IMG/VR virus record: IMGVR_UViG_3300024502_000010 | Span: 1-64,000 of that record | Strand: one strand, 5' to 3' | DNA length: 64,000 nt | Shown: positions 45,950 to 62,266 of the stretch, in pieces | Numbering within the stretch: position 1 is the stretch's first letter | How the letters are laid out: each line of letters opens with the position of its first letter | Translations under genes and position numbers: made by a program | Notes under the pieces: generated by a model | Seen by the model: the letters and a program-made list of their open reading frames with translations, nothing else | The model's database searches: none | Told to the model about the DNA's origin: nothing

Positions 45950-45960
45950 ACTGTGTATCA

Positions 45961-47993: not shown

Positions 47994-48241
47994 TGTGATT
48001 TAGTGGTAAAACAGTGAGTGTGAATCAGTTGCCGAAGAAAGCGTCGAACTCATCAGCAACATAATCAATCAGTTCGTCAGTTGCATCAAGGTCAAAGACA
48101 TTGCAAACGAAATCTACACAATCATTCAAATCTGTGTGATTGTTGCACATGAACTCCAGAAGTGCAGGAGTGATGTCGGTTTGGAAGTCGAAAGAGGTGT
48201 TAGTCATACTATAGGTACACTTTAGAGGATCCAAGTTGCTA

Positions 48242-48832: not shown

Positions 48833-48883
48833 TGTGGAATTGCGGTGATACTATAGGTACACTTTAGAGGATCCAAGTTGCTA

Positions 48884-49138: not shown

Positions 49139-49377
49139 TTCAAGATGTGGCGATAATCAATGGATTTGATACACCAACCGTAGGCAGTTGTAATCTCTTC
49201 TACTAAATCTTCTTCATCATCTGCCTCCCAGATTTGACCGATTGTTGCTTGAGTGGCATAATCAAACTCCAAGAATCCATCACATTCTGCATCGTGTTCT
49301 GGAGATTGATTCTCGCCACAATACGGACATTCATCATCAAAATCAAAAGCGATTTCAGTAACTTGGAATTGCATCAT
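49135..49377 (-). CDS. Early hypothetical protein with a CxxC..H..C motif
   Basis: QFQVTEIAFDF, CPYCG and DLVEEIT..YGWCIKSIDYR motifs. Confidence 0.65.
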   Translation of the reverse strand: MMQFQVTEIAFDFDDECPYCGENQSPEHDAECDGFLEFDYATQATIGQIWEADDEEDLVEEITTAYGWCIKSIDYRHILK

Positions 49378-49514
49378 TTGCAGTAGTTAGGGTCAATTTG
49401 GCAGAACTGATCTGCTTGGCGTTCTTGATACTCATTCACCGTCGCATAAGCAGGAATTGCAACTTTAAAACCAAGTGCAATAGTAGCAATCAGGAAAGCA
49501 ATTCGCATTACTAA

Positions 49515-49685
49515 TCAGTCAACGACAGAGTAACAGGCAACCCAGGAAGGAATCCCAGAAAGTGATAGCGAACCGTTGCGGGCATCGCAATAGTCTTGGG
49601 CGTCATCTTCAGTGTAGAAAGGTCCAATATACTCGGGAGAATCCAGAGCATCGGATACGAAACGGACGGTGAAAGTGTTGCTCAT
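49515..49685 (-). CDS. Early hypothetical protein
   Basis: MSNTFTVRF...SPEYIGPF; starts at the ATG adjacent to repeat copy 7. Confidence 0.6.
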   Translation of the reverse strand: MSNTFTVRFVSDALDSPEYIGPFYTEDDAQDYCDARNGSLSLSGIPSWVACYSVVD

Positions 49686-49719
49686 ACTATAGGTACACTT
49701 TAGAGGATCCAAGTTAGAA

Positions 49720-49863
49720 TCAACGAAAACTTACATTGACCGCAACAACTTTTGCGTGAGGATTTCGTGCCAGTGCAGTCTCACGGGCATCTTTTGGGTT
49801 GGTTGCTTGCACTTCTTCTTTGAAGACTTTGCCACCAACGTAGAGTTCAACGATGTACTTCAT
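49720..49863 (-). CDS. Small conserved protein (47 aa, not in track)
   Basis: MKYIVELYVGGKVFKEEVQATNPKDARETALARNPHAKVVAVNVSFR. Confidence 0.7.
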   Translation of the reverse strand: MKYIVELYVGGKVFKEEVQATNPKDARETALARNPHAKVVAVNVSFR

Positions 49864-49901
49864 GTGTTTGTTTGTATTTTAGAAAAAATTGAGGATTTCC
49901 C

Positions 49902-49990
49902 TGCAGTGAATGACCTATGACACCGCTGCAGTAGAATTGAAGAAAAAACAGGTTTTTGCTTCAGTGGTGGACTGGGTTCTCAGTGAGACA
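49902..49990. repeat. Duplicated intergenic hairpin element, copy A
   Basis: tgcagtg(a/g)atgacctatgacaccgctgcagtagaattgaagaaaaa is shared with 56087-56176. Confidence 0.85.
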
Positions 49991-50355
49991 CAAGTGAGAA
50001 TCACAGGGTTTGCCACTCTTGTGCCTCTTTCAAGTTAGAGTTAAAGAATTTTTGGAAGATAGAATCGATCACAGGATACCATTCTTCGTTTGCACTAGGA
50101 TACCCACATTCTCGTGCTTGATTGAGAAACTTAAGAATACAACTTTCCTCATTAGGAGTAAAATTAACGCGATTGAAAGTGTAACCGTCAGTCATCAATC
50201 ATCTCCAAAGTTGTTGACAAGAAAATCCTCAAGTTCGCAAAGTTCCACCTCATCTAAGGAGTCAATGTAGTTACGCAAAGTATCTTCTAAGACACCATTA
50301 TTCTTTTTGCAAGTTTCATACAGAAACTCAAAAAGTTGTGTTTTGTTAGTCATAA

Positions 50356-50625
50356 TCAGTTAGCGTAGATGGACATTTGCTTACGGTCACGGATTGAATC
50401 ATCAATCACCTCACCAATCTGTTCGTAAATGTAGTCGGAACCGCCTACATCAGCGAGCACATCTTGAGTGAAAAGAGAAGAAAAATACTTCTCTTGATTG
50501 TCCTCACCATCAAACTCAACGACATCGTGTTGAGTGAATACAAACGCAGCACAGGGAGCGTTCTCACCTTGACTCTCAATCATTTGGTTGATAGAGTCAC
50601 GAAGTTCAGAAAGAGTGCGGTACAT
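50356..50625 (-). CDS. Early hypothetical protein (89 aa)
   Basis: MYRTLSELRDSINQMIESQGENAPCAAFVFT..DV. Confidence 0.65.
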   Translation of the reverse strand: MYRTLSELRDSINQMIESQGENAPCAAFVFTQHDVVEFDGEDNQEKYFSSLFTQDVLADVGGSDYIYEQIGEVIDDSIRDRKQMSIYAN

Positions 50626-51078
50626 AATTAAACAGGGGTAACTTCAACAGAGCGGATAAGATTTGTGCGGTCTTGTGCTAGGTAATCATCAGCGATTTTA
50701 CCACAAGATGAACGAGACTTGATGAACCTTTCTTCATAGTAAGTCTCTGCACTGTTGGGGACTTTATACTCAATCAAGAGTCGATAGTTGTTCATAATCA
50801 GTACAGAAGAGAGAAAGAACCACAGAACTTACGAACCCACTGGAGAGTATCATAATGACTGCGAGGATTAGACATTACCATGCTCTTGTTAGTTACAGGA
50901 TTGAGAGCAATAGCAACATATTTGTGGTCACATTCTTGATACTCAGGGGTGATTTGTTGAATGAACATTTGCATCACCTTACCTTCTTTCCAGTTGGTGA
51001 CATAGTGAAAGACTTGATCCATTTCAGTGGTTGTGCTCATACTATAGGTACACTTTAGAGGATCCAAGTAAGAATCAC

Positions 51079-51333
51079 TCACCACTTTCCTTGTTGAATG
51101 AGAATCTTTTTGATTTCAGTATAAATGAAGTGACGAAGTTTAGAGTCGGTAGTGTTATCAAAAGCATAATAGAGACGATTCAAGTATTCATTCTGTGTCG
51201 CACCTATGTTACCATTACCACCGATGTCATTGAGTGTAGAACCTCCCTTAGATTTGGGTTTTCCGAAGTTGCCTGTAATGTTTCCTTGTGTGCGAAGTTT
51301 GGGGCGAATCTTTGAAAGGTTAGAGTAAGTCAT
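51079..51333 (-). CDS. Early hypothetical protein (84 aa)
   Basis: SKIRPKLRTQG.ITGNFG..K.K.GS.LND motif. Confidence 0.65.
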   Translation of the reverse strand: MTYSNLSKIRPKLRTQGNITGNFGKPKSKGGSTLNDIGGNGNIGATQNEYLNRLYYAFDNTTDSKLRHFIYTEIKKILIQQGKW

Positions 51334-51587
51334 CGTGCTACAATGTCAAGAGTTTCCAACAGCATCATAGAAAGTTCCATCTGGTTCTCATCATCAACCA
51401 CAGGAATGTTTGTCTCTACAAACTCACTAATCAGTTGGGCAAAGAGTTCAGTTGTGCGCTCATCTGCGAATAGAGCAGTGGCAAGTTCGTTCTTGAACCC
51501 ATCACGCAAAAGTTTGAGAGACTTTGTGACAGTCATTTCTTTGATTTGTTCATCATAAGTCATTTCAGTGTCAGGGATTGTGCTCAT
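51330..51587 (-). CDS. Early hypothetical protein (85 aa)
   Basis: Four-base overlaps with the genes on both sides. Confidence 0.65.
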   Translation of the reverse strand: MSTIPDTEMTYDEQIKEMTVTKSLKLLRDGFKNELATALFADERTTELFAQLISEFVETNIPVVDDENQMELSMMLLETLDIVAR

Positions 51588-51808
51588 TCTTCATTTCCAT
51601 CAAAAATCGAATCTTCCCAACCATCAAGGTAAGGTTGTTCATCCTCCTCATAAGGGAACATTTCGTCATACTCTTCGTCAGTCAGAGTAAGATACTGAAC
51701 ATTAGCATTTTTGTGCTCTTCAGCATACACTAACTGATAGTGAGCGAAAGAAGAAGGGTCTGAACTAGCGTATTCTAGCAAACCATCAACAAAACAAAGG
51801 TAGTTCAT
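51584..51808 (-). CDS. Early hypothetical protein (74 aa)
   Basis: MNYLCFVDGLLEYAS...FAHYQLVYAEEH. Confidence 0.65.
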   Translation of the reverse strand: MNYLCFVDGLLEYASSDPSSFAHYQLVYAEEHKNANVQYLTLTDEEYDEMFPYEEDEQPYLDGWEDSIFDGNEE

Positions 51809-51843
51809 TTTGCGTACAGATAGGTTATAAATAATAACACAGT

Positions 51844-52332
51844 ATGCAGGTATTAAAGATGAAAGAACACCCAGAACATAAAGGTTATTTTATCACAGAA
51901 AACGGTGAAGTTTGGTCATACTGGCGCAATCGTGGAAGAGATGGGTGGGGAGTAGTATTGGATAAAGAACCAAAAAAAAGAAGATTTAATAATCATTGCA
52001 AGGGATACTTGACTGTTTGGATTAAAACGGAAGAAGGACAGAAGTTAAAAAAAGTTCATCGTTTGGTCGCAGAAACTTACATTCCAAATCCAAATAATCT
52101 CCCTCAAGTTAATCACATTGATGGCGTAAAAACAAACAACAATGTCAGTAATCTTGAGTGGTGCAGTAATCAAAAAAACACGGAGTTGGCATTAGCAAAA
52201 GTTCATCGGTTAGTAACACCAACTGGAGAAATAGTAGAAGTTTTTAATCTTGGAAAGTTTTGTAGAGAACATAAAATTGATAGGGGAGACCTTTATAAAG
52301 GGAAAAAGTCCAAAGGTTACTATTTGCAATAA
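51844..52332 (+). mobile_element. Free-standing HNH homing endonuclease (NUMOD4-like N-terminus plus HNH)
   Basis: Y.ITENGEVWS, GYLTV, VHRLVAETYIPNPNNLPQVNHIDGVKTNNNVSNLEWCS motifs; TATAAATA late promoter at 51826-51833; antisense to neighbours. Confidence 0.92.
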
Positions 52333-52764
52333 TCACCTTTTGTAAAGATATCCGGACGACCAATCTGCGTTCTCAAACAACCATTCACGGTCCTTAATTA
52401 ACAAGAGATTGTATCGCTCACCCTTTGCAGGACTACGCCACGACGCTGACTTGAAAACGCCTCCATTTTGCTTGTCGATAAAACAGTGAACCGATCTCGA
52501 TCCACCACCATTCACCAGAATGACTTTGTGATACTTTTTGCCAGTCTCAACAGTATAATCAATGTCACACTTGCCAGACTTGAGTTCATCAATCTTGCGC
52601 TGATGATACTCTTGATTATCAGCATCATTCACGAACTTTTGGTGACCGCGAATAGAATACTGACGATAGTTGTCTTTCAGTGCTTCAATCAGCAGCAGAG
52701 TGTTCTTATACACATTCTCTGCAATAGTTTGTTGTGCTTGTGCTTGCATCGTAGGAGTGCTCAT
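52333..52764 (-). CDS. Conserved early hypothetical protein
   Basis: GKKYHKV...SVHCFIDK..G.V.KSASW..PAKG.RYNL motif; start after repeat copy 9. Confidence 0.7.
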   Translation of the reverse strand: MSTPTMQAQAQQTIAENVYKNTLLLIEALKDNYRQYSIRGHQKFVNDADNQEYHQRKIDELKSGKCDIDYTVETGKKYHKVILVNGGGSRSVHCFIDKQNGGVFKSASWRSPAKGERYNLLLIKDREWLFENADWSSGYLYKR

Positions 52765-52792
52765 ACTATAGGTACACTTTCGAGGATCCAAG

Positions 52793-53710
52793 TTACCAAC
52801 TCTTTGCGATTGTGAAGTTGGCATGAGAGAATACCTCACGATCAACTACTTTGTAAGACCCAAACTTGTTATGAATGACATAACCCTCGTGGAAACCTGC
52901 AACATCCCAGAGGAAACATTCAATGTCATCCTCTTCATGAATGAACAGGAACAAATCATCCTTGATAGACTTCACCAACTTCCACAATCTGATGAGGTTG
53001 ATGTCACAATCGCATTTTTCTGCAATTTCATCCTCACGGATGGTGCGTTGCTCTCGGATGCAAGCGTTAATCTCTTTTTTGATTTGTGATGCTTTCTTGT
53101 CGCTCACAAACTCACACAGAGTGCTCATTTGTTTAGCAAAGTTACACACATCCTCCAAATCTTCACGATAAGGATTCAGCGACACAGCAGGTTGCACAAA
53201 CAAACATTTCTTTGTGCTTGCAAACTTGCTAGTGATAGGATGTGCTACCATTTCAGGCAGACGCTCACCAGTGTAGTAAGTATGTGGAGCAACGATAATC
53301 TCTTGACGCACAACTTCAGGAAAACGATAGGTAATCGTGTTGGGCGTGAATGTATCCAACCCTTTACCGAAACCAATCCAATCTCCCTGATACACATTGT
53401 TAGTGCGAGGAAGATAATCCAGACAGAAGATGAGGATTTGTGCTACCCTTGGTTGTCCACCAAAATGAGTAAAGATGTCATCTTCGTTATAGCAAAGGCG
53501 AATCTTTTGCTTGTTAAATGCTGCTTTGGTGCAGACAAAAAACTTACCATTCTCAGGATTAGTGCCCCAAACAATAGCAGGAGCACCATCCATCTTGACG
53601 CTGATAAAACTATCAACCTCAGAGAACCAATCAAGAACAGATAGATTACCCGTCAGGATTTCATCTTCAGGGTGCTCAAGGTGCTTATTTTGCATTGGTT
53701 GCTTACTCAT
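52793..53710 (-). CDS. Conserved protein with a KxDG ligase-type motif (possible nucleotidyltransferase)
   Basis: NKHLEHPED, SVKMDGAPAIVWG..P..GKFFV.TK and HEGYV...K.VDR..FS..NF motifs; exactly fills the interval between repeat copies 9 and 10. Confidence 0.6.
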   Translation of the reverse strand: MSKQPMQNKHLEHPEDEILTGNLSVLDWFSEVDSFISVKMDGAPAIVWGTNPENGKFFVCTKAAFNKQKIRLCYNEDDIFTHFGGQPRVAQILIFCLDYLPRTNNVYQGDWIGFGKGLDTFTPNTITYRFPEVVRQEIIVAPHTYYTGERLPEMVAHPITSKFASTKKCLFVQPAVSLNPYREDLEDVCNFAKQMSTLCEFVSDKKASQIKKEINACIREQRTIREDEIAEKCDCDINLIRLWKLVKSIKDDLFLFIHEEDDIECFLWDVAGFHEGYVIHNKFGSYKVVDREVFSHANFTIAKSW

Positions 53711-53980
53711 ACTATAGGTACACTTTCGAGGATCCAAGTTTCAATCAATCAAACTTGCATCAGTTTAGCAAGACGATTGCGAATATCAAAGAGTTCCATT
53801 TCATCCATATCTACATCATCAAGACCTACGGGAGCAAACGCTTCAAGATCTACAGTGCCATTTTGCATAATGGGAGAATAATATAACTCATCTCCATCTT
53901 CTTGCGACAGAGTATAGACGCAACCGTGACCAGGAACAGTGAGGAAAATCATTGAAGTTTTACGAACAAAGGTACAATAA

Positions 53981-54010
53981 AGGAGCACTTGCTAAATTGC
54001 AAGTGCTCCT
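53981..54010. terminator. Perfect 12-bp hairpin downstream of 54021..54308 (terminator or processing site)
   Basis: AGGAGCACTTGC-taaatt-GCAAGTGCTCCT; the U-tract is weak. Confidence 0.5.
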
Positions 54011-54020
54011 GTGTCAGTTT

Positions 54021-54263
54021 TTATACTGCCACACGACGGGCAGATATTTGTTGTTCAATAAAGTTCAATACTTGCTTCACATAAGGCGAAACAGTTTGAG
54101 TGAACTTCACCACATCTTCACGAAGTTTGTTGACTTCATACTGATGGATTTGCCAGCGAACCTGAATGTCTTGGAAGTATTGTTCACGAGTAATCAGTAC
54201 CTGTGGGACGGACACTTCGGGAGCAACAGAGACATTAGCAGTTTGCTTGCGAGCGCGAGGCAT
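54021..54263 (-). CDS. Early hypothetical protein
   Basis: MPRARKQTANV...LITREQYFQDIQVRWQIHQYE. Confidence 0.65.
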   Translation of the reverse strand: MPRARKQTANVSVAPEVSVPQVLITREQYFQDIQVRWQIHQYEVNKLREDVVKFTQTVSPYVKQVLNFIEQQISARRVAV

Positions 54264-54310
54264 AGGGTAAATGCGTCTTACACTATAGGTACACTTTAGA
54301 GGATCCAAGT

Positions 54311-54490
54311 TTAATTCACTGGAAGTTTTGCCATTGACTTACCTTTTTTGTGGTCTGTGATATACTTTCGCGCAGAACTTTCGGTCCTACAAACTTTCTC
54401 AAGTTGCTGACCATTGTGAATGATAAGATACTGATTCCCAAACGGAATTGCAGCATATGTATCCTTGAACATTGTAAATCCTTCTTTCAT
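54311..54490 (-). CDS. Small hypothetical protein (59 aa, not in track)
   Basis: MKEGFTMFKDTYAAIPFGNQYLIIHNGQQLEKVCRTESSARKYITDHKKGKSMAKLPVN. Confidence 0.65.
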   Translation of the reverse strand: MKEGFTMFKDTYAAIPFGNQYLIIHNGQQLEKVCRTESSARKYITDHKKGKSMAKLPVN

Positions 54491-54492
54491 CG

Positions 54493-55356
54493 TTACATAA
54501 ACTTGGTAAGACCAACAGTTTCACTAACTCTCTTTTCAATCAATTTACCATACTCCTCGTGAAGTTCGCATCCAACATAATTCCTTCCCAAAGATTTGGC
54601 AACAGCAGCAGTAGTCCCACTACCCATAAATGGGTCAAGAATAGTGTCACCTTCACGAGAACCAGCAATAATACAAGGTTCAATAAGTTCTGGAGGATAA
54701 ACTGCAAAGTGAGAACCTTTGTATGGTTTAGTTGTTACTTCCCATACACTACGTTTCCGTTTTAATTCCTTGCCATCTACAGTGGGTTCTTTAATCGAAT
54801 CAACATCAAAATAATAGTTCTTGCTCTTAGATAAGAGGAAGATATATTCGTGAGATTTGGTACATCGATCTTTCATACTTTCGGGCATTGGATTTGGTTT
54901 GCTCCAAATAATATCCTGTCGTAGATACCAACCATCTGCACGCAAAGCAAATGCTAGCATCCAAGGAATACCAATCAAATCTTTATCCTTTAGACCCTCA
55001 AGTTTATTTCCTCTTCTAGGATTTCGTATTTGTGGCAAATCTTGGTTGTTAGATGCCACAGATTGCTTAGGTAGTGTCTGACCTTTACCAGAACGATAGT
55101 TGTAATAAGAATCACCAATGTTAACCCACAATGTGCCATCATCTGTAAGAACATCACGCACACCGCGAAACACCTCTACCAGTTGGGAGATAAACTCTTC
55201 AGGCGACTCTTCTAAACCAATTTGATTATCTTCGTTACCGTAATCACGCAGACCGTAGTATGGTGGAGAGGTCACACACATTTGTGCTTTTACACCAGCG
55301 TCTACAAAATGTTTAAGAGTTGAGCGGCAGTCACCATAAAGAATAACATCCTTCAT
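54493..55356 (-). CDS. DNA methyltransferase, N4-C/N6-A beta class (287 aa)
   Basis: VTSPPY catalytic motif near the N-terminus; HFAVYPPEL and ILDPFMGSGTT SAM-binding motif near the C-terminus. Confidence 0.92.
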   Translation of the reverse strand: MKDVILYGDCRSTLKHFVDAGVKAQMCVTSPPYYGLRDYGNEDNQIGLEESPEEFISQLVEVFRGVRDVLTDDGTLWVNIGDSYYNYRSGKGQTLPKQSVASNNQDLPQIRNPRRGNKLEGLKDKDLIGIPWMLAFALRADGWYLRQDIIWSKPNPMPESMKDRCTKSHEYIFLLSKSKNYYFDVDSIKEPTVDGKELKRKRSVWEVTTKPYKGSHFAVYPPELIEPCIIAGSREGDTILDPFMGSGTTAAVAKSLGRNYVGCELHEEYGKLIEKRVSETVGLTKFM

Positions 55357-56048
55357 TCAAGAACCTCTTTTACAAACAATTTATCCATATTTGAGTGATT
55401 TATACGAAAGCAAGTGCCACGATTGCGAACACCCTTACCAGTGCCAACATTATACTGGGTTCTCAGTCGTAAGTCAATAGAAATTACATCATCTTCGATT
55501 GCCTTACGAAACAGATTTTTATCAATAGAAATGTAGACATACGCTTCATTGTAGTGAAAATACTCTATACCATTACGAACTTCAACATCGGCAAATACTT
55601 TAACACAAGATGGAAATTTGTGAGCAAACTGTTTAATAAGTGAATCCCAATCCCACCTAACAATCTCCAGTTCTTCGTGCTTTATGGAAACATATTCATC
55701 ATCAGTATGAATCCAAAATCCTCTGTTGTTTTTGGTTCTTGTCACAGTAGATTGTCCAGACAATTCCCCAATGTGTTTTGTGTGAGGAAATCCAAAAGTT
55801 TCTAGGAACTTTAATTGAGGTATCTGCCATTCACCTTCCTTTGTAAAGAGAGTTTGTTTTCCACCAGCACCTTTCCTTGCTGCTTTCAACTCTTTTCCAT
55901 CAATATCTGGACCAGAGATACAATTCTCAGTCAAACCAAGTTCTTGTTCAAAAGTATGACCAACTCCAGTATCACCTTTGCGATGAGACTTTATGAAACC
56001 TTTTGCTTTAATTCGGTTGTAAGCAGGAACGAACTCAACGAAATCCAT
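55353..56048 (-). CDS. MvaI/BcnI-family restriction endonuclease-like protein (231 aa)
   Basis: RKGDTGVGHTFEQELGLTEN..SGPDI.G.ELKA, TLFTKE and RNRGTCFRI motifs; ATGA overlap with the methyltransferase. Confidence 0.8.
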   Translation of the reverse strand: MDFVEFVPAYNRIKAKGFIKSHRKGDTGVGHTFEQELGLTENCISGPDIDGKELKAARKGAGGKQTLFTKEGEWQIPQLKFLETFGFPHTKHIGELSGQSTVTRTKNNRGFWIHTDDEYVSIKHEELEIVRWDWDSLIKQFAHKFPSCVKVFADVEVRNGIEYFHYNEAYVYISIDKNLFRKAIEDDVISIDLRLRTQYNVGTGKGVRNRGTCFRINHSNMDKLFVKEVLE

Positions 56049-56086
56049 GGTAAAATCTATACTTTAGTAAAAATCAGGAATTTGGT

Positions 56087-56176
56087 TGCAGTGGATGACC
56101 TATGACACCGCTGCAGTAGAATTGAAGAAAAATCAGGTTTTGACCCCTGACTGTGACTGGGTTCTTAGGCGAGACT
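56087..56176. repeat. Duplicated intergenic hairpin element, copy B
   Basis: See copy A at 49902. Confidence 0.85.
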
Positions 56177-57363
56177 CACCGCCGCACTACACTATCAACC
56201 ATCTCACCCTTCTCAAACACAGCATCAACAACTCGCTGGAGTGCTCGCTCTGTAGATACTCCAACTTTGGAATATACAGGCACCACACAGAGACCGAAGA
56301 CCTTTTCTTTGCCGCCAAGGCGAAGAACCCGACCAATAGTTTGGGTCATTTCAATCACATCCATATTGCGAAGAAAGACGACCGCCTCTAGTTCGCTGAC
56401 ATTAATTCCTTCGCTCAAAATAGAGCGATGGAAGCAAACAAACTTCTTGTTAGGGTCACGACCCCAAGAATTGAGCGTGTCAAAGAATACTTCACGATTG
56501 ACTTTCTTACCATCAATAATCGCTCCAGTTTTTGAGGTGATGTAGAGGTAAGAATAACCACGCTGATTTAGTTGGGAAGCACAGTCAGTATGAGACATCA
56601 GGTTGATAAGTTGCTTCGCAGACTTAACACATACCAGGATTTTCTTGCAATCAATATCCTCCAGAGTGTCCATCAGATTGCTACTGTCACATTCAGCAGT
56701 TACCTGCTTTGGTGCAAGTACATCAAACTTCTTCGCTACAATCTTAGGAGCAATAATGTATCCTCCATCAACAAGTTCAGGAGCAGAAACGCGGCAAATA
56801 ATATCTCCATAGACATCACGATCGTTCATTCCAGGTTTAGAAGGAGTGAGCGAAGTCTTCCTGGTAGCAGTGAAGAAGTAGCAGCGGCGTGCATTAGCAG
56901 CAAAGTGCTCAGTTGCAGGGAAAAAGTGACGCTGAACAGAATTATGTGCCTCGTCAAAGTAAATGGTATCCACATCAACTTCTGCCACTTGAAGACGCGA
57001 CAGAGAGTTGTAGGTGGTTACAATCAGGCGATGATTGTCGGCATTAGCATCAACCCAGTTGCGAATCTCTTGAGGGCGAGTAGAAGACTCGTGATGAGTT
57101 TCGCCACTGTGAACATGGAAAACAGCAGCGTTAGTGATAAACTCCAGGAACTCCGAAGACAGTTGCTCTGCCAGAAGAATACGCGGAGCAACAACAACAA
57201 TGGTCTGGGGAGTTTGTGACTGCAACTCACGCAGACAATCATAGATCATCTTCAGAGTCTTGCCACCACCAGTAGGAACAATGACTTGACCTTTATCATG
57301 CTGTTGCATAGCAGCAACTCCGCGTTCTTGGTGAGGACGAAGATTGATCAGATGAGGAATCAT
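56176..57363 (-). CDS. Superfamily 2 helicase (ResIII/DEAD-like, 395 aa)
   Basis: LRPHQ, PTGGGKT (Walker A), DEAH, TAT and ILSEGINV...MTQTIGRVLR motifs. Confidence 0.88.
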   Translation of the reverse strand: MIPHLINLRPHQERGVAAMQQHDKGQVIVPTGGGKTLKMIYDCLRELQSQTPQTIVVVAPRILLAEQLSSEFLEFITNAAVFHVHSGETHHESSTRPQEIRNWVDANADNHRLIVTTYNSLSRLQVAEVDVDTIYFDEAHNSVQRHFFPATEHFAANARRCYFFTATRKTSLTPSKPGMNDRDVYGDIICRVSAPELVDGGYIIAPKIVAKKFDVLAPKQVTAECDSSNLMDTLEDIDCKKILVCVKSAKQLINLMSHTDCASQLNQRGYSYLYITSKTGAIIDGKKVNREVFFDTLNSWGRDPNKKFVCFHRSILSEGINVSELEAVVFLRNMDVIEMTQTIGRVLRLGGKEKVFGLCVVPVYSKVGVSTERALQRVVDAVFEKGEMVDSVVRR

Positions 57364-57453
57364 TACGAATTACAGAGTTTCAGGTGGTTTGGTATCTAAA
57401 AGACATTATAGCACCCTTCCTGACGCTTGGAAAGGGTGCTGGCGGACAGTTAA

Positions 57454-57609
57454 TCAACCGCCAAACATTTCATCAAACAACCAATCACCAGAACGCTCTT
57501 TTTCTTCCCAGACTTTGTTAGCGTTTGCTTCAATCATTGCTCGCTCAATTTTCATGTCGATAGGAGAAACAGTGCTGAACCAGTTACCGTTGCGGTCTTG
57601 CCAGAGCAT
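57454..57609 (-). CDS. Small hypothetical protein (51 aa, not in track)
   Basis: MLWQDRNGNWFSTVSPIDMKIERAMIEANANKVWEEKERSGDWLFDEMFGG; downstream of repeat copy 12. Confidence 0.65.
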   Translation of the reverse strand: MLWQDRNGNWFSTVSPIDMKIERAMIEANANKVWEEKERSGDWLFDEMFGG

Positions 57610-57668
57610 AATGTTGTTTCGTTTGAGTGCTTATACTATAGGGACACTTTAGAGGATCCAAGTAAGTA

Positions 57669-58277
57669 TCAGCGAGAAGTGTATCGGTGTTGGAGGTCTT
57701 TCTCACTCTTAATGTTTTTACCTCTTTCTCTTTCTCCTGCAATTACAAGATCGCGGAGTTTCTGTTCTCCCTTTCTTGTAACATGCAATCTTTCTTGTCT
57801 GCTTAGACCAGATGCTTTTTGTGGTTTGTATCCAGGAGCGGGTTCTGCTGTTGCTTTCTTCTTAGAAAGAAGTTTAGTTGCTGCTTTTACTACTTCTTTT
57901 GCTTTTGGTTTTTCTGCTGCTGGTGCTGGTGATTCTCCACCTTTCTTAGCAGCAATTCTTGCCTGTGCTGCTTTTCTTCTTTCCTCTTTTGCTGCTGCCA
58001 GTTGTCTTTCTCTAGCAGATCCACGCTCTTGTTCTGGTTGTTGAATTTGTGAACCCTTTGGTTTTCCAATATCCTTGCGTGGTTTGTATTCTTTTGCTGG
58101 TTCCATTTTACCACCGCCAACTGCTTTCATACGGCGTTTTTCAGGAGTTGTCTTTTTGCGTTCAGCACCAATACGACCGCCAGGTCTTGCTTTTCTGATT
58201 GTTGCTTGGAATCCAAGTGCTTTTGACTTGTCATCAACTTCTTCGCAAATAGACATAAACTCCTGAAAGGTTTTCAT
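57669..58277 (-). CDS. Lys/Arg-rich protein with a T4 capsid-targeting-like N-terminus (202 aa)
   Basis: MKTFQEFMSICEE; CTAAATA late-promoter-like site at 58302-58308. Confidence 0.6.
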   Translation of the reverse strand: MKTFQEFMSICEEVDDKSKALGFQATIRKARPGGRIGAERKKTTPEKRRMKAVGGGKMEPAKEYKPRKDIGKPKGSQIQQPEQERGSARERQLAAAKEERRKAAQARIAAKKGGESPAPAAEKPKAKEVVKAATKLLSKKKATAEPAPGYKPQKASGLSRQERLHVTRKGEQKLRDLVIAGERERGKNIKSEKDLQHRYTSR

Positions 58278-58304
58278 TGTTATCTAAACACTACTTTTTA
58301 GTAT

Positions 58305-58505
58305 TTAGAACTCTACTTCCTTTGCTTTATATGAACCCTTGAATACTCGTCCTTCAGTATAGAATTGCTTTACACGTTCGCGGCGAGTAGCAAGAAGCAA
58401 ATCATATTCTTCTTGTTGCTGCTTAGTAAAGATAAAATCTTGACGACGCCAAGCATCTTTCAGTTCTTGAATGTGAGGGAGCACGTTGGGGATGTGTTCA
58501 GTCAT
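58305..58505 (-). CDS. Hypothetical protein (66 aa)
   Basis: VLPHIQELKDAWRRQDF.FTKQQQEEYDLLL..RRERV. Confidence 0.65.
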   Translation of the reverse strand: MTEHIPNVLPHIQELKDAWRRQDFIFTKQQQEEYDLLLATRRERVKQFYTEGRVFKGSYKAKEVEF

Positions 58506-58752
58506 TTGAGAATAATAAAGGAAAAGTGTTCTGTGTGGGTGATTTGGTGGACAGTTTAGAAACTGTCAGTAATCATAGTTGGAGTTAAGATACTCATTAA
58601 GATTGAAGTCGTTAGATTCTTCAATGAGTTCAGTTAGATCTTTTTCAATAAAATCAAATCCATTAGATTCTTCAATTTGAATGTCATCGAAGCAGTCCAT
58701 AATTTGTTTCATGCTTACATTATAGGTACACTTTAGAGGATCCAAGTAAAAA

Positions 58753-59001
58753 TCAATCAATTTTTTTAACAGATTTTGCTAACTTTTTCAGTCTCTTTGT
58801 TACTTCTTTTCCGCCACTACGCTTTACAATTAACTTATTAACTTCTTTCTTTGTTGGTTTCCCTTCTGGACCTTCATATCTTTGAAGAGTATAAGTTTGC
58901 ACACCAGTATCACTCCTCTTGTAAGTTCCAGGAACTGCTTGAGGTGGAGTGTCTGGTCTTTTTGCTTCGCAGATTTCGTAGAACTCTCTAAATGTTAGCA
59001 T
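58753..59001 (-). CDS. Basic protein with a CTS-like N-terminus (82 aa)
   Basis: MLTFREFYEICEAK; co-transcribed with 59003..59647. Confidence 0.55.
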   Translation of the reverse strand: MLTFREFYEICEAKRPDTPPQAVPGTYKRSDTGVQTYTLQRYEGPEGKPTKKEVNKLIVKRSGGKEVTKRLKKLAKSVKKID

Positions 59002-59002
59002 T

Positions 59003-59647
59003 TTATCCTAATTCTCCCATTGCTTTTTGCTTACGAAGTTTCTTAGGATTCTTCGTCTTATCTGCAGAGTAGTTATTATCATCCTCATTATCAGGATCTA
59101 CAGCACTACGATGTCTCGTGCGTCTTTCTTCATCATCCATATTTGCACGACTTCTCTTTGCTTCATCTGGAGAATATCTTCTACCACTGTTATACCATTC
59201 CTTACCTACATGACCTCTCTTCTCAGCATCAGCAGAAGCAGATCTCCTCTTATTCTTCTGACGATTTGCCTTGAAGTCCTTCATAGTCATTCCTTCAGCA
59301 ATCATAATACTCTCTCTCCACTCTTCACTCATATTCCCCATAATTGCCGTTGCTGCTTGTTCAGTATCAGCATATCCTTCATCAAGAAGGTGCGAAAGAA
59401 TGATGTCGTATAGGTCATAATCCTCAACATATTGTGAACGATATTTGCCACCTGTTTTTTTATGAGTATCTTCAAGTTCTGCTGCTCTTGCGTCAGCATA
59501 CTTTCTACTCTTTACTGGTTTACCAATCTTCTTCTCTTTCTTTCCATCAGGAGAACCCATTACTTGATATGGCATCTCATCAAGTTGCTGGTTTTCAACA
59601 ACTTCCATATATGCTTCTTGAAGATTGCGAATGTCTTGAGCGTCCAT
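59003..59647 (-). CDS. Charged late protein with the DLYDIILSHLLDEGYA domain (214 aa)
   Basis: MDAQDIRNLQEAYMEV...LDE; ATAAATA late promoter at 59668-59674. Confidence 0.65.
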   Translation of the reverse strand: MDAQDIRNLQEAYMEVVENQQLDEMPYQVMGSPDGKKEKKIGKPVKSRKYADARAAELEDTHKKTGGKYRSQYVEDYDLYDIILSHLLDEGYADTEQAATAIMGNMSEEWRESIMIAEGMTMKDFKANRQKNKRRSASADAEKRGHVGKEWYNSGRRYSPDEAKRSRANMDDEERRTRHRSAVDPDNEDDNNYSADKTKNPKKLRKQKAMGELG

Positions 59648-59905
59648 CTTATGAATAACTTTTTAGTTATTTATTGTTACTCAAACTCAAGGGGTTTATT
59701 TGCAACTCTCATAGGTGGAGTTTGATATTCTGGCATACTAGAAGTTTCAACAAATACTTCTATCTTAGTCTCATCATTCCAATGTCGAATTGCATTAGCG
59801 ATAATGAAGCAGTTGGTAATAAAAATGCTCAAAAACATCAAAAGGCGGATAAGTGCTACCTTATCCGCTTCTTTATCACATTTACTTGCTTTTTCTCCAA
59901 GTGCC

Positions 59906-60169
59906 TTAGCAAGCAATCGCCAGACAGTTCTGTTCTTCTTCATATCTTGATTTTCTTGATTTAACATACTTTAAATGTTTCCAATCTTCTTTATAACAAA
60001 CAACAAGCAATCTTTCATTTGCGTGAATGGGGCAGGCGTGATAGTTTACTTGGTCTTTAGGACGAACAACATACTCAATCGTAACATATTCGTCATCCCT
60101 AAAATAAACCCAACCTTCAACACCTTTTGTCCATTCAACATAATCATTGACTTGTGGTTTGTATGTCAT
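59906..60169 (-). CDS. Conserved hypothetical protein (87 aa)
   Basis: Y.PQVNDYV.W...VEGWVYF.DDEY.TIE motif. Confidence 0.65.
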   Translation of the reverse strand: MTYKPQVNDYVEWTKGVEGWVYFRDDEYVTIEYVVRPKDQVNYHACPIHANERLLVVCYKEDWKHLKYVKSRKSRYEEEQNCLAIAC

Positions 60170-60603
60170 ACAAAGAACGCATCCAATGGAGACTGCTTGA
60201 TAGGCATTGCTGAATAGTTTCGCGTGTCGTTGATATTTACACGAGCACCAACTGTCTTACTATTGATTGGGGCAAAGTATTCTCTGGTCTTGGATTTGTA
60301 GAATCCCCAGATTGTCCTTGTGGGAGCACCATTATTGTAATCAAACTTACGATTGCAATACAACCATATAGCAATAACTCCACGCTTGAACTCTTCGAAC
60401 TCATAATAATAATTTTCGGGTGCTTTATGCGGAAACTCAGCAATCATAGAACTTGTCACGCGACATATACTCAATTTGTTTCTGCAGTTGTGAGATTTCG
60501 TGTTCTTGTTCTGCAATTTTACTTTGCAGTTGTTCAATACGTTCTTGGTACTGTTTCTTCAAATCAAACACCATTTTATTGGTGTGAGTAACGTGGTGAG
60601 TCA

Positions 60604-60846
60604 TCAGGTTGTAAAAGATTCAACTACTGCAGATTCTACATCCTCAGCAAGCGCATAAGTCCTCGCGCTTAACACATTTTCACGAAGAGTAGTATAGTGT
60701 TGCTCATAAAAATTGTCAGAATCTTCTGCAGAAATCAAATCAAAACATTCATTGTCGTTTTCCGCAATCACATTCCAAAGTCCACCGTATTCACTGGACG
60801 GAAAAGGAATGTAGTGGTCAACGATGTAAAGAAACTTTTGTGCCAT
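60604..60846 (-). CDS. Conserved hypothetical protein (80 aa)
   Basis: LYIVDHYIPFPSSEYGGLWNVIA. Confidence 0.7.
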   Translation of the reverse strand: MAQKFLYIVDHYIPFPSSEYGGLWNVIAENDNECFDLISAEDSDNFYEQHYTTLRENVLSARTYALAEDVESAVVESFTT

Positions 60847-61381
60847 TTGTCTTTGTAAATTACCTCTTAAGTTTAAGATTAGTTGTCGTTATTGTCAATG
60901 TCGGAAGCAACTATAAAAGAAACTCCTACAGTCAAAAGAATACCGATTCCCATACCAAGAATAAAAGTCATTAGTAAAACTCAGCGAGATAGTAGTCAAC
61001 AGTTACCTCAAGTTTCGCTGCTTCACGCTCAACTTCTTTCCAGAACTCTTCTGCTACTTTGTCCATTTCTGCTTGTTTAATAAGGTCACGGAGTCGTTTG
61101 GGGATCATTTGGATTTCTCCTTAAGTTTTGCTTCTTCGCGTGAATACATTACCTTTAAGTAATATAGCATAATGGAGGATACAAATGCAACCAGTGCTGC
61201 GTAGATTGCTACACCGAGTACAATACTCATCTGATTTCTATAGAGGGTGGTTTCTTGAGATTCTCTATTGCCTTAGAGCGATAGTAAGCATCATACATTT
61301 TGTCATCACGCTGGATTAGAAAGACATTCCAACCAAGAATAACTGCAAAACCAATCAATCCAACAACAATGTACTTTTTGT

Positions 61382-61789
61382 TCATTTGCTCATTTGAAGA
61401 GTAGGAACAGGCATACCACCTTCGGTGGGAACATAGATGGTCACATTACCTTTGTTAGATCCTTCTTCAAGACCAGTAATGTAAAGATACTGAAGATACT
61501 CACGGTTGTCCTTCAGACTATCACCAATGATTTGGTTTGCCTTAGCAACACCAGTAGCACGGATGATTTCAGCATCAGCAAGTTGTTGAGCACTATCTTT
61601 CTTTGCTTGTGCTTCAAGAACTGCTACCTGACGAGTGTATTCTGCTTTTTGCAACTCTGCTTTACCAGCAAGAGATTGCTGCCACACATTATATTGTGGA
61701 CCACCAATAAAGATGAGACCACCAATCACAACCACACCGACAGCAATAGCAGCAACAGCAGGGTCAATAAATCCGTTTTGTTGTTTCAT
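61382..61789 (-). CDS. Membrane-anchored coiled-coil protein, SPFH/prohibitin C-terminus-like (135 aa)
   Basis: N-terminal hydrophobic helix, A/E/K-rich heptads (IRATGVAKANQIIGDSL) and YL.YLY.....IYVPTE. Confidence 0.65.
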   Translation of the reverse strand: MKQQNGFIDPAVAAIAVGVVVIGGLIFIGGPQYNVWQQSLAGKAELQKAEYTRQVAVLEAQAKKDSAQQLADAEIIRATGVAKANQIIGDSLKDNREYLQYLYITGLEEGSNKGNVTIYVPTEGGMPVPTLQMSK

Positions 61790-61806
61790 AATAATTTACC
61801 TAAGAA

Positions 61807-62220
61807 TTAAACAGCAAGCGCAGCAGAGGGGATTTCAATCACTTCAGGAAGTTTTTGTTCATAACAATTCATATTGTAGCACACCCATTCACCGTTGCGG
61901 AAGACATAGGCATACTCTTCACCATTAGCAGGCAGAAGATACTCACACAAATCAGCATCAAGACGAGGAGGACAATCATCGTTACGATAAGAATAATAGT
62001 TGGGTCCATAAACACCCTTCACTGCACTATCATTCCAGCGGTCATCAGTCCAGCAGCAAGACATATCACCACCATCAATCAAGTCAGCAACTTTCTGACG
62101 AGTGTTGTAATGAGTGTTCAGGATACGACCCAACCATTCAGGATAACCATCCCAGTGGTGATACACAGAGAGAATAGAACCATTCTTAAGTTCAAGACCG
62201 ATTCGTGCTCGGGTGGACAT
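61807..62220 (-). CDS. Conserved early hypothetical protein
   Basis: MSTRARIG...SVYHHWDGYPEWLG..L..HY motif. Confidence 0.75.
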   Translation of the reverse strand: MSTRARIGLELKNGSILSVYHHWDGYPEWLGRILNTHYNTRQKVADLIDGGDMSCCWTDDRWNDSAVKGVYGPNYYSYRNDDCPPRLDADLCEYLLPANGEEYAYVFRNGEWVCYNMNCYEQKLPEVIEIPSAALAV

Positions 62221-62266
62221 TTCAAGTTTGTTGCTTACATTATAGGTACACTTTAGAGGATCCAAG

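What the first reader, a model, noticed from the sequence alone, without database searches (positions are those of the whole stretch)
54493..57363. Apparently complete restriction-modification pair on a lytic phage, downstream of an SF2 helicase
Seen: an MvaI/BcnI-like endonuclease with an ATGA overlap into an SPPY methyltransferase, both intact, 127 bp after a ResIII-like helicase and within one repeat-bounded interval. Established: T4-like cyanophages often carry orphan methylases, and characterised MvaI/BcnI enzymes cut CC(W/S)GG. Inference: a phage-borne system for host DNA degradation or competitor exclusion. The methylase may instead be a common orphan type unrelated to the nuclease.
Basis: partly seen in the sequence, partly recalled or inferred. 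Interest (0 to 1): 0.6.

Follow-up and report, generated by a model that had tools for sequence, protein, structure and literature searches.

The report
Restriction-modification gene pair on a cyanophage
A T4-like virus of cyanobacteria carries an intact DNA-cutting enzyme joined to a protective DNA methylase; dozens of wild relatives keep the pair under selection but almost no catalogued phage has it, so these viruses probably turn a bacterial-style weapon on host or rival DNA.

Summary
On the minus strand lie an SF2 helicase (57363..56176), a 127-nt gap, an MvaI/BcnI-family endonuclease (56048..55353) and a beta-class SPPY methyltransferase (55356..54493), the last two sharing an ATGA overlap.

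The nuclease looks active. All four MvaI catalytic residues are present and invariant in 39 homologues. The AlphaFold model matches MvaI and BcnI bound to DNA (TM 0.80). dN/dS is about 0.17.

The pair is a real unit. In 41 of 42 related viral loci with room downstream, the methylase follows the nuclease within 12 nt, in at least three different genomic neighbourhoods.

The helicase is not part of it. It is a common cyanomyovirus gene.

The methylase is the common cyanophage "orphan" type, far more often found without the nuclease.

Bacterial MvaI/BcnI homologues (40% identity or less) pair with a differently ordered, larger methylase, so the phage pairing is non-canonical.

A sigma-70-like promoter inside the nuclease gene, conserved beyond coding needs, probably gives the methylase its own transcript.

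Residue mapping predicts CC/WGG cutting. Matching specificity of the two enzymes, and their role (host DNA breakdown or exclusion of rival phages), remain inferred.

The parts
57635..57659 (-). Upstream copy of the 25-nt promoter-like repeat that opens the interval
   Evidence: One of 14 same-strand copies confined to 44120-62263 of the genome, 0 expected by chance. It lies about 25 nt before the ATG of the 51-aa ORF.
57454..57609 (-). 51-aa ORF of unknown function, first gene after the repeat
   Evidence: ORF list; no PADLOC match.
57405..57433 (-). Sigma-70-like site with a TG-extended -10 element, just upstream of the helicase and preceded by an inverted repeat
   Evidence: Consensus scan, 10 of 12 matches with TG before the -10 hexamer; sequence read. 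This is a consensus match only.
56176..57363 (-). SF2 helicase (cyanophage gene cluster T4-GC 36); a neighbour, not part of the system
   Evidence: ResIII, DEAD and Helicase_C domains; phrog_16. It is present in 419 cyanophage records. It is adjacent to R-M in only a subset of loci.
56049..56175 (.). 127-nt intergenic region holding a weak terminator-like hairpin (56152..56131) and a 38-nt stretch (56095-56132) repeated exactly at 49910-49947
   Evidence: No significant RNA fold (z = 0) and no Rfam family.
55353..56048 (-). MvaI/BcnI-family Type IIP restriction endonuclease, 231 aa, predicted to cut CC/WGG
   Evidence: PF15515 at 6.7e-39. Sequence matches to MvaI 6.5e-15 and BcnI 4e-9 in the PDB. 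E34, D48, E53 and K55 correspond to MvaI E36, D50, E55 and K57 and are invariant in 39 homologues. AF2 model pLDDT 92.4; Foldseek 2oaa and 2odi at TM 0.80. dN/dS median 0.17.
55449..55477 (-). Sigma-70-like promoter (TTGACT-N17-TATAAT) embedded in the nuclease ORF, 92 nt before the methylase ATG
   Evidence: 11 of 12 consensus matches. Both hexamers are identical in 10 nuclease lineages that are 41-81% identical to the window's nuclease, while the spacer's synonymous sites vary. The Asp codon is GAC in 10 of 10 lineages, against 15% GAC usage in the same genes.
54493..55356 (-). Beta-class N4/N6 DNA methyltransferase with an SPPY motif (predicted m4C), 287 aa, overlapping the nuclease by ATGA
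   Evidence: PF01555 at 4e-57, collinear with the profile; PADLOC MTase_II at 1.5e-108; phrog_67. It is the only PF01555 or PF00145 methylase in the 204,829-b genome. dN/dS is about 0.05-0.15.
54311..54490 (-). 59-aa ORF of unknown function, last gene of the interval
   Evidence: ORF list; no family match. A homologue lies elsewhere relative to R-M in L008 and L009, so it is not a fixed member of the pair.
54282..54306 (-). Downstream copy of the 25-nt promoter-like repeat, which closes the interval and opens the next gene
   Evidence: Contig breaks in the metatranscriptome assemblies fall on this repeat.

Best explanation
This is a working Type IIP restriction-modification cassette carried by a lytic T4-like cyanophage. 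The nuclease is a monomeric MvaI-like PD-(D/E)XK enzyme that nicks one strand and then the other. Residue mapping predicts that it cuts CC/WGG. The methylase, whose start overlaps the nuclease's stop codon by 4 nt, is a beta-class SPPY enzyme predicted to make N4-methylcytosine at the same site. That would keep the phage's own 173 CCWGG sites uncut. The methylase probably has its own sigma-70-type promoter inside the nuclease gene, so it can be made independently of the nuclease, and perhaps earlier. The incoming phage DNA arrives already methylated. Unmethylated DNA in the infected cell, meaning the host chromosome and any co-infecting phage that lacks this methylation, is cut. I take host-genome breakdown (shut-off and nucleotide supply) as the main pay-off, by analogy with chloroviruses, and exclusion of rival phages as a side effect. 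Shown here: family membership, an intact active site, the fold, purifying selection, strict R-to-M linkage in several genomic contexts, and a conserved embedded promoter motif. Inferred: CCWGG specificity, m4C chemistry, protection of the phage by the methylase, timing of expression, and the biological role.
For: The nuclease belongs to the family and looks intact.

The central-base readers resemble MvaI, not BcnI. BcnI H77 and H219 correspond to T69 and C213 here, where MvaI has T and A. MvaI R209, which contacts the central T, corresponds to R194.

The close nuclease relatives (at least 46% identity) recovered from marine metagenomes are nearly all full length at 227-256 aa, apart from a few truncated fragments. 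dN/dS has a median of 0.17 over 44 pairs.

The methylase follows the nuclease within 12 nt in 41 of 42 viral loci with room downstream; these carry 28 distinct methylase sequences. The same holds in independent ENA contigs, where the upstream neighbour is UvsX or small ORFs instead of the helicase.

The genome holds 173 CCWGG and 69 CCSGG sites, and this is its only cytosine-type methylase candidate.

The embedded promoter is conserved beyond coding constraint.

Both genes lie on contigs assembled from six metatranscriptome libraries.

Published work reports m4C at CCWGG in marine myovirus genomes with no methylase assigned (PMC8919816, PMC9516812), and N4-methylation of the inner C blocks MvaI (PMC3001055).

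Chloroviruses set the precedent for a lytic virus using R-M against host DNA (PMC7019647).
Against: No direct evidence links the methylase's specificity to the nuclease's.

Bacterial MvaI/BcnI homologues pair with a different, permuted methylase of 414-461 aa, so a match here cannot be assumed by homology.

One contig (L037/G001; 126,920 b, 70% complete) has an intact nuclease but no PF01555, PF00145, PF02086 or PF05869 methylase, and still holds 102 CCWGG and 29 CCSGG sites.

The nuclease and methylase trees are only partly congruent, and synonymous divergence differs between the two genes.

The site-frequency contrast is weak and confounded.

Presence in RNA libraries does not exclude DNA carry-over.

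If nuclease and methylase are made together, the host DNA would also become methylated, so the host-degradation role depends on kinetics that were not examined.
Confidence: 0.55

Rival explanations
1. The cassette serves phage-against-phage conflict, or its own spread, rather than host DNA degradation. In mixed infections the nuclease cuts related phages that lack the methylation. Repair from the R-M-bearing genome, or simple killing of the rival, then favours the cassette, much as freestanding homing endonucleases spread in T4-like phages. Phages carrying only the methylase are immune.
For: The same methylase type is very common without the nuclease: at least 593 viral stretches carry it against about 44 with the nuclease, and isolates such as P-SSM2, P-SSM4 and S-SSM5 carry the methylase alone. 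The nuclease always sits exactly at the methylase's 5' edge, whatever lies upstream (helicase, UvsX or small ORFs), as expected of a mobile insertion. Some lineage pairs have much lower synonymous divergence in the nuclease than in the methylase. One locus (L051) combines a methylase about 86% identical to the window's with a nuclease allele about 41% identical, which indicates exchange. The cassette lies in a repeat-rich early region of the kind described as mediating module shuffling in T4-type phages (that comparison is from my memory of Arbiol et al. 2010).
Against: No nuclease remnants were found next to 74 methylase-only loci, so gain and loss events were not caught in the act. In chloroviruses the restriction enzymes were tested and do not cause mutual exclusion (PMC7019647). 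Nothing here measures co-infection outcomes. The two roles are not mutually exclusive.
Confidence: 0.25
2. The two genes are neighbours but not a cognate pair. The methylase is an ordinary anti-restriction orphan aimed at host enzymes. The nuclease has a different specificity or a different self-protection route: site avoidance, another DNA modification, compartmentalisation or timing.
For: The methylase lineage is overwhelmingly orphan and differs from the methylases paired with bacterial MvaI/BcnI homologues. One contig holds the nuclease with no detectable methylase. CCGG, and therefore CCSGG, is completely absent from 23 of 28 nuclease-bearing loci. A BcnI-like CC/SGG enzyme would therefore find no target in most carrier genomes.
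Against: Linkage in 41 of 42 loci, with start and stop overlapping by 4 nt or lying within 12 nt, across three genomic contexts is hard to explain without functional dependence. The window genome itself holds 69 CCSGG and 173 CCWGG sites. The BcnI residues that read the central C:G pair are missing. The promoter embedded in the nuclease gene for the downstream gene is a typical R-M arrangement.
Confidence: 0.1
3. The nuclease acts as a site-specific nickase in the phage's own DNA transactions, in the manner of its relative MutH. It might mark unmethylated new strands or create 3' ends for recombination-dependent replication, with the methylase setting the strand mark.
For: MvaI, BcnI and MutH share one monomeric fold and cut one strand at a time (PMC1874612, PMC3089477). 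In several genomes the pair sits among replication and recombination genes: DNA polymerase, UvsX, the gp41-type helicase and the SF2 helicase.
Against: The model matches MvaI and BcnI at TM 0.80 but MutH only weakly (E 0.13, TM 0.37). The gene is absent from almost all cyanomyoviruses, so it cannot be a core replication function. The residues that let MvaI bind its site in both orientations and cut both strands are retained.
Confidence: 0.07
4. The nuclease gene is an inactive or decaying passenger.
For: Nothing specific, beyond the general observation that phage-borne nucleases are often lost and that most carriers of this methylase lack it.
Against: The reading frame is intact in nearly all close relatives recovered. 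The catalytic tetrad is invariant. dN/dS is about 0.17. The fold model is confident.
Confidence: 0.03

Closest known systems
R.MvaI (CC/WGG) and R.BcnI (CC/SGG), monomeric Type IIP restriction endonucleases (PDB 2oaa, 2odi)
   Same: Same Pfam family, same two-lobed fold (TM 0.80) and same E-D-ExK active site. The CC:GG-reading positions are kept or conservatively changed: D192 and R194 correspond to MvaI D207 and R209, R215 to R230, T66 to T68, and the HDH triplet becomes RNR. The size is similar, 231 aa against about 240-250 aa.
   Different: Only 23-26% identical in the structural alignment. It belongs to a separate viral clade whose nearest cellular relatives are 40% identical or less. It is encoded by a lytic phage. 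Its partner methylase belongs to another lineage with another motif order. Its specificity has not been measured.
Bacterial MvaI/BcnI-type R-M operons as found here in 40-odd genomes and MAGs (for example Parageobacillus thermantarcticus)
   Same: The nuclease gene is adjacent to, and often overlaps, an N4/N6-family methylase gene.
   Different: The bacterial partner methylases that were scanned are 414-461 aa, with the AdoMet-binding region first and the catalytic region last. The phage partner is 287 aa with the catalytic SPPY motif first. No bacterial neighbour is a close relative of the phage methylase.
Cyanophage 'orphan' methylase, gene cluster T4-GC 38 (annotated dam or cytosine methyltransferase in P-SSM2, P-SSM4, S-SSM5, P-HM1 and others)
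   Same: 64-72% identical to the window's methylase. It has the same SPPY and FxGxG motifs and often the same helicase neighbour.
   Different: In those genomes no nuclease is present: only one of 50,697 phage records has one. Many orphan copies carry a 26-aa insertion in the variable middle region, but both forms occur with and without the nuclease.
Chlorovirus restriction-modification pairs (for example in PBCV-1)
   Same: A lytic virus encodes adjacent Type II R and M genes. Only a minority of its methylases have a companion nuclease. The rest are orphans, proposed to result from loss of the nuclease (PMC7019647).
   Different: The host is a eukaryotic alga and the enzyme families differ. 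Virion packaging of the nuclease and host DNA degradation are shown there and unknown here.
Freestanding homing endonucleases and promoter/stem-loop cassettes of T4-type phages
   Same: A small nuclease gene inserted between conserved genes in a repeat-rich early region, with a patchy distribution among close relatives.
   Different: This nuclease recognises a short, frequent site and needs genome-wide protection by a methylase, rather than cutting one long homing site. The comparison rests on my recollection of the T4 literature and was not tested here.

Membership tests
MvaI/BcnI restriction endonuclease family (PF15515) | Sequence match to the family profile above the curated cut-off | tested here: met
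   134.7 bits against a cut-off of 25, covering profile positions 5-227 of 227. The genome search gives the same single match.
MvaI/BcnI restriction endonuclease family (PF15515) | Catalytic residues E...D-x4-E-x-K (MvaI E36, D50, E55, K57) | tested here: met
   E34, D48, E53 and K55 align to them (numbering checked against PMC1874612). They are invariant in 39 homologues.
MvaI/BcnI restriction endonuclease family (PF15515) | Two-lobed monomeric fold resembling the DNA-bound enzymes | tested here: met
   AF2 pLDDT 92.4 and pTM 0.86. Foldseek gives 2oaa at E 1.2e-18 and TM 0.80, and 2odi at E 3e-18 and TM 0.80. The monomeric state itself cannot be tested here.
MvaI/BcnI restriction endonuclease family (PF15515) | Recognition of CC(W or S)GG and cleavage after the second C | tested here: inconclusive
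   Residue mapping favours W: T69 and C213 stand in place of BcnI H77 and H219, and R194 corresponds to MvaI R209. Site statistics do not settle it. An enzyme assay is needed.
Type II restriction-modification system | Adjacent nuclease and methylase genes inherited together | tested here: met
   ATGA overlap. The methylase lies within 12 nt downstream in 41 of 42 loci with room. The same holds in three different genomic contexts. RE+ methylases cluster on the tree: 8 changes against 24 in shuffles.
Type II restriction-modification system | The methylase modifies the nuclease's site and protects DNA from it | not testable with these tools
   Only indirect evidence is available. This is the sole cytosine-type methylase candidate in a genome with 173 CCWGG sites. 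m4C at CCWGG has been reported in marine myovirus genomes (PMC8919816).
Beta-class N4-cytosine DNA methyltransferases | PF01555 domain with the catalytic motif (S/D)PP(Y/F) before the AdoMet-binding FxGxG motif | tested here: met
   The profile match is collinear, residues 25-274 to profile positions 2-220. SPPY lies at residues 30-33 and FMGSGTT near residue 245.
Beta-class N4-cytosine DNA methyltransferases | Product is N4-methylcytosine rather than N6-methyladenine | not testable with these tools
   SPPY rather than DPPY is the usual mark of m4C enzymes (established knowledge, recalled from memory). The best PDB sequence matches are adenine enzymes (CcrM, MboIIA) over the shared C-terminal half only.
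Canonical bacterial MvaI/BcnI R-M operon | Partner methylase of the permuted type (414-461 aa in those scanned), AdoMet-binding region first | tested here: not met
   The bacterial neighbours scanned show that order. The phage partner is 287 aa with the opposite order, and tblastn finds no close relative of it in 47 bacterial loci.
Helicase-dependent restriction system (Type I/III-like, ResIII) | The helicase/ATPase subunit is co-inherited with the nuclease and methylase | tested here: not met
   The helicase is present in 419 cyanophage records, only one of which holds the nuclease. It is absent from the neighbourhood of most R-M loci.
Virus-borne R-M used against host DNA (chlorovirus type) | Nuclease packaged in the virion and host DNA cut early in infection | not testable with these tools
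   No proteome or infection data are available. There is only presence in RNA-library contigs.

The most novel reading that the evidence does not exclude
The 'orphan' m4C methylases carried by a large share of ocean cyanomyoviruses are not mainly shields against host restriction. They are antidotes in a phage-against-phage contest. A minority of phages carry the cognate MvaI-like nuclease and destroy unmethylated co-infecting genomes, and host DNA along with them. Methylase-only phages are immune free-riders, and the nuclease gene moves among methylase-bearing genomes by recombination at the methylase's 5' edge.
Probability: 0.15. Interest if true: 0.8.

Novelty: new variant of a known kind. 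Interest (0 to 1): 0.55.

Why it matters
Complete restriction-modification pairs are well known in bacteria, in some temperate phages and in chloroviruses. I found no description of one in T4-like cyanophages. The nuclease has no PHROG family and occurs in one of 50,697 catalogued phage records. Yet it forms a diverse clade, under selection, in marine and estuarine metagenomes.

It offers three things. First, it is a candidate route by which cyanophages without modified bases could distinguish host DNA from their own. Second, it gives a concrete, testable reason for the abundance of orphan m4C methylases, and of m4C CCWGG marks, in ocean myoviruses. Third, it is a natural case of a nuclease joined to a methylase lineage other than its usual bacterial partner.

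The embedded promoter is a compact example of a regulatory signal written into a coding sequence. If the enzyme is active, it may also be a useful small MvaI-type enzyme from a mesophilic marine source.

Tried and rejected
1. The helicase as part of the system: rejected. It is a core cyanophage gene and its linkage to the pair is not conserved.

2. Other nucleases hiding upstream of 'orphan' methylases: rejected. The recurrent upstream ORFs are the gp45 clamp, UvsX, a halogenase, denV and a 2OG oxygenase.

3. Nuclease pseudogene remnants beside 74 methylase-only loci: none at E 0.05. The direction of change (gain or loss) is therefore unresolved. The rooted methylase tree needs at least 5 changes and does not polarise them.

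4. Site avoidance in the window genome: CCWGG O/E 0.71 and CCSGG 1.16. These are unremarkable beside the general palindrome avoidance in this genome.

5. The natural experiment with the methylase-less nuclease carrier G001: neither site is depleted, so it says nothing about specificity and remains unexplained.

6. A contrast of 77 palindromic patterns between 9 methylase-bearing and 8 methylase-less cyanophage genomes. CCWGG ranks first (mean O/E 0.73 against 0.92), but AGATCT is about as strong, the ranges overlap, and the two groups differ in host and ancestry. I do not count it as evidence of specificity.

7. RNA structure or a known RNA family in the 127-nt gap: none.

8. The 25-nt repeat as a canonical sigma-70 promoter: it fails the consensus spacing and was not picked up by the scan. 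I call it promoter-like only.

9. Expression: contigs from RNA libraries cover the pair, but they cannot show strand, transcript ends or level, and DNA carry-over is possible.

10. Literature searches for a cyanophage-encoded restriction enzyme of this family found none. The supplementary tables of PMC8919816, which list R genes in viral MAGs, are not held.

11. The large profile search and a complex prediction were not run. The family assignment was already clear, and Type II R and M proteins are not expected to bind each other.


Full report
**What is there**

The window belongs to a 204,829-b viral record with 36.7% G+C. Its baseplate genes resemble those of Synechococcus phages Bellamy and S-SM2. 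Its closest catalogued relative for this locus is classed in Kyanoviridae. It is a T4-like cyanomyovirus. Near-identical DNA occurs in riverine metagenomes.

Between 57363 and 54493, on the minus strand, the gene order is as follows:
- a 395-aa SF2 helicase;
- a 127-nt gap;
- a 231-aa protein matching the MvaI/BcnI family (6.7e-39, 134.7 bits, cut-off 25);
- a 287-aa PF01555 methyltransferase (4e-57), whose ATG overlaps the nuclease's TGA as ATGA.

**Is the nuclease real and intact?**

- Sequence search of the PDB finds only MvaI (6.5e-15) and BcnI (4e-9).
- The MvaI paper names E36, D50, E55 and K57 as the active site (PMC1874612). After correcting a 3-residue offset in the deposited chain, these align to E34, D48, E53 and K55. 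All four are invariant in an alignment of 39 homologues that are 33-91% identical to the window's protein.
- An AlphaFold model built on that alignment is confident (pLDDT 92.4). Its only significant structural matches are MvaI and BcnI, best in their DNA-bound forms (TM 0.80).
- The word search returned 158 relatives. About 95 clusters at 46-91% identity are nearly all full length (227-256 aa), apart from a few truncated fragments, and come almost entirely from marine metagenomes.
- Pairwise dN/dS among viral copies has a median of 0.17 over 44 pairs with dS below 1.5.

An inactive remnant is therefore very unlikely.

**Predicted specificity**

BcnI reads its central C:G pair with H77 and H219 (PMC3089477). 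The window's enzyme has T69 and C213 at those positions, where MvaI has T and A.

MvaI R209 contacts the central thymine and the neighbouring guanine, and D207 contacts the cytosine. Both are kept, as R194 and D192.

The residues that read the outer pairs are kept or conservatively replaced: R215 corresponds to R230, T66 to T68, and the MvaI triplet HDH becomes RNR.

This points to CC/WGG, but it is an inference from alignment, not a measurement.

**The methylase**

The match to PF01555 is collinear. SPPY lies near the N-terminus and FMGSGTT near the C-terminus, which is the beta-class order. From established knowledge, SPPY rather than DPPY usually marks N4-cytosine enzymes.

It is the only PF01555 or PF00145 methylase in the genome. 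The genome's two other methylases are D12-class adenine enzymes.

The genome holds 173 CCWGG and 69 CCSGG sites. An active nuclease of either specificity would therefore need a protector.

**Do the two genes belong together?**

A profile-guided scan of IMG/VR found 44 loci with a nuclease at least 50% identical to the window's. In 41 of the 42 loci with room downstream, a homologue of this methylase follows within 12 nt, often with the same 4-nt overlap. These loci carry 28 distinct methylase sequences.

The upstream neighbour varies:
- the helicase, in the window, in AG-345-L05 and in a few others;
- UvsX, in a set of ENA contigs up to 167 kb in which the pair lies between uvsX and the gp41-type helicase;
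- small ORFs, in the most abundant cluster.

So the nuclease is tied to the methylase's 5' edge and not to any other gene.

The reverse does not hold:
- At least 593 viral stretches encode this methylase type.
- In 60 of the loci examined no nuclease is present.
- Cultured phages such as P-SSM2, P-SSM4, S-SSM5, P-HM1 and P-TIM68 carry the methylase alone.
- In those genomes the gene upstream of the methylase is an ordinary one: helicase, gp45 clamp, UvsX, denV, an oxygenase or a halogenase.

The helicase is present in 419 cyanophage records and is simply a frequent neighbour of the methylase.

**History**

On a tree of 95 distinct methylases rooted with homologues from phages of other bacteria, the nuclease-linked ones are strongly clustered (8 state changes against about 24 in shuffles). 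They are not one clade, however, and at least 5 changes are forced.

The viral nucleases form one group apart from four bacterial outgroups, and their tree is only partly congruent with the methylase tree. Several lineage pairs show much lower synonymous divergence in the nuclease than in the methylase. One locus combines a methylase about 86% identical to the window's with a nuclease only about 41% identical.

No nuclease remnants lie beside 74 methylase-only loci.

My reading is a single entry of the nuclease into the cyanophage pool, followed by recombination among methylase-bearing genomes and clean losses. The order of events is not resolved.

**Origin of the pairing**

The nearest cellular nucleases are 40% identical or less and come from scattered bacteria and archaea, none cyanobacterial. 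Two closer 'MAG' hits are cyanophage contigs binned by mistake.

The methylase-like neighbours scanned beside those cellular nucleases are 414-461 aa, apart from one cut off by a contig end. They have the AdoMet-binding region first and the catalytic region last, and none is a close relative of the phage methylase.

The phage cassette is thus a non-canonical marriage of an MvaI-type nuclease with a phage-type beta-class methylase.

**Regulation**

It recurs mainly in contigs of the same phage lineage. Each copy sits shortly before a gene start. It does not fit sigma-70 spacing, so I call it promoter-like only. Two copies bracket the unit made of the 51-aa ORF, the helicase, R, M and the 59-aa ORF.

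The more telling signal lies inside the nuclease gene, 92 nt before the methylase start: TTGACT-N17-TATAAT. Both hexamers are identical in ten nuclease lineages that are 41-81% identical to the window's nuclease, while the synonymous sites of the spacer vary freely. The aspartate codon that supplies the -35 cytosine is GAC in all ten, although GAC makes up only 15% of aspartate codons in these same genes. This is selection beyond the protein's needs. It suggests that the methylase has its own transcript, the usual safeguard of R-M systems. The motif is degraded in another nuclease subclade, so it is not universal.

**Expression**

Six metatranscriptome libraries from the riverine studies hold the whole stretch. 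In the four that were laid, one contig spans 54283-56132 (the 59-aa ORF, M and R) and another spans 56103 onward (the helicase), both at 100% identity. Contigs cannot show strand, ends or level, and DNA carry-over is possible. This is consistent with transcription but does not prove it.

**Site statistics**

Three tests were run.
1. Within the genome, CCWGG is mildly depleted (O/E 0.71), no more than many other palindromes.
2. The one contig with a nuclease but no detectable methylase (G001, 70% complete) is depleted in neither CCWGG nor CCSGG. It stays unexplained.
3. Across 9 genomes with this methylase and 8 without, CCWGG is the top discriminator of 77 patterns (0.73 against 0.92). AGATCT is nearly as strong, the ranges overlap, and the two groups differ in host and ancestry.

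I do not lean on any of these tests.

**Mechanism and role**

- Most likely (0.55): a working R-M pair in which pre-methylated phage DNA is spared and unmethylated DNA in the cell is cut. Host DNA breakdown is the main benefit, as in chloroviruses, whose packaged restriction enzymes degrade host DNA within minutes and whose many orphan methylases may be leftovers of lost nucleases (PMC7019647).
- Chief rival (0.25): conflict between phages, or selfish spread, which the patchy and mobile distribution of the nuclease and the abundance of methylase-only genomes would fit.
- Lesser rivals: a non-cognate neighbour pair (0.10), a MutH-like nicking role (0.07) and a dead gene (0.03).

Published marine methylomes report m4C at CCWGG and CCNGG in myovirus-like genomes with no methylase assigned (PMC8919816; PMC9516812). 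N4-methylation of the inner cytosine is what blocks MvaI (PMC3001055). This makes the proposed match plausible and easy to test.

**Novelty**

The enzyme families and the idea of virus-borne R-M are known. The following appear to be new:
- the presence of such a pair in lytic T4-like cyanophages;
- a diverse environmental clade missing from PHROGs and present in only one of 50,697 phage records;
- the non-canonical methylase partner;
- the embedded promoter.

I found no paper describing it. I rate it a new variant of a known kind, with interest 0.55.

Noticed in passing
Whole genomes of S-SSM5, P-SSM4, P-TIM68, P-HM1, S-SSM4, S-TIM4, P-SSM7 and P-SSM2 (loci L262-L358); IMG/VR loci L057-L129: CCGG is completely absent from all 8 isolate genomes that carry this methylase type (2 to 137 sites expected in each). 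It is also absent from 53 of 53 methylase-only viral loci (0 sites in 296,891 b) and from 23 of 28 nuclease-bearing loci. Eight methylase-less Synechococcus phages keep 8-144 sites. The window genome has 155 (O/E 0.84) and G001 has 98. GCGC is also absent from four of the isolates. The link between the methylase and total CCGG loss is unexplained; shared host pressure is one possibility.
   Followed up: partly
L037:4001-4693 (IMG/VR contig of 126,920 b, handle G001): An intact nuclease homologue (57% identical, catalytic residues kept) is followed by a glycine-zipper protein and an Hsp20 rather than a methylase. No PF01555, PF00145, PF02086 or PF05869 methylase lies anywhere on the contig, which is 70% complete, and its sites are not depleted.
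   Followed up: partly
window 44120-62263, minus strand (14 copies, for example 54282-54306): A 25-nt repeat sits shortly before many small genes of this region and nowhere else in the 204,829-b genome. It is probably a phage-specific promoter or regulatory cassette, and it recurs mostly in contigs of the same lineage.
   Followed up: partly
window 56049-56175 and 49864-49990: The helicase-nuclease gap is roughly 80% similar by eye, over its whole length, to another intergenic region that precedes a 47-aa ORF. Within it, 38 nt are identical (56095-56132 and 49910-49947). This is a second class of repeated intergenic element, with no significant fold and no Rfam match.
   Followed up: partly
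L051:2294-2998: A much more divergent nuclease allele (about 41% identical, with a 2-residue insertion inside the PD...ExK motif) sits in front of a methylase about 86% identical to the window's. This is evidence that nuclease alleles are swapped on a conserved methylase background.
   Followed up: partly
window 51844-52332 (+): An HNH_3 endonuclease ORF (1.6e-8) is the only plus-strand gene inside a long minus-strand block. It is likely a freestanding homing endonuclease.
   Followed up: no
window 62321-63097 (-) and genome 197178-197906 (-): The genome also holds two D12-class (Dam-like) adenine methylases, so the phage encodes three DNA methylases in all.
   Followed up: no
window 52793-53737 (-): A 314-aa DUF6267 protein (5e-81; phrog_455) of unknown function begins at a copy of the 25-nt repeat, so its true start codon is probably a few codons inside the listed ORF.
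   Followed up: no
L130 (contig NHGE01000052.1) and L131 (contig NZVD01000053.1): Two contigs filed under a Euryarchaeota MAG and a Rhodopirellula MAG carry the cyanophage-type nuclease-methylase pair (66-68% and 79-81% identical). One of them is the same 14,985-b contig as an IMG/VR viral record. They are probably phage contigs binned by mistake.
   Followed up: partly
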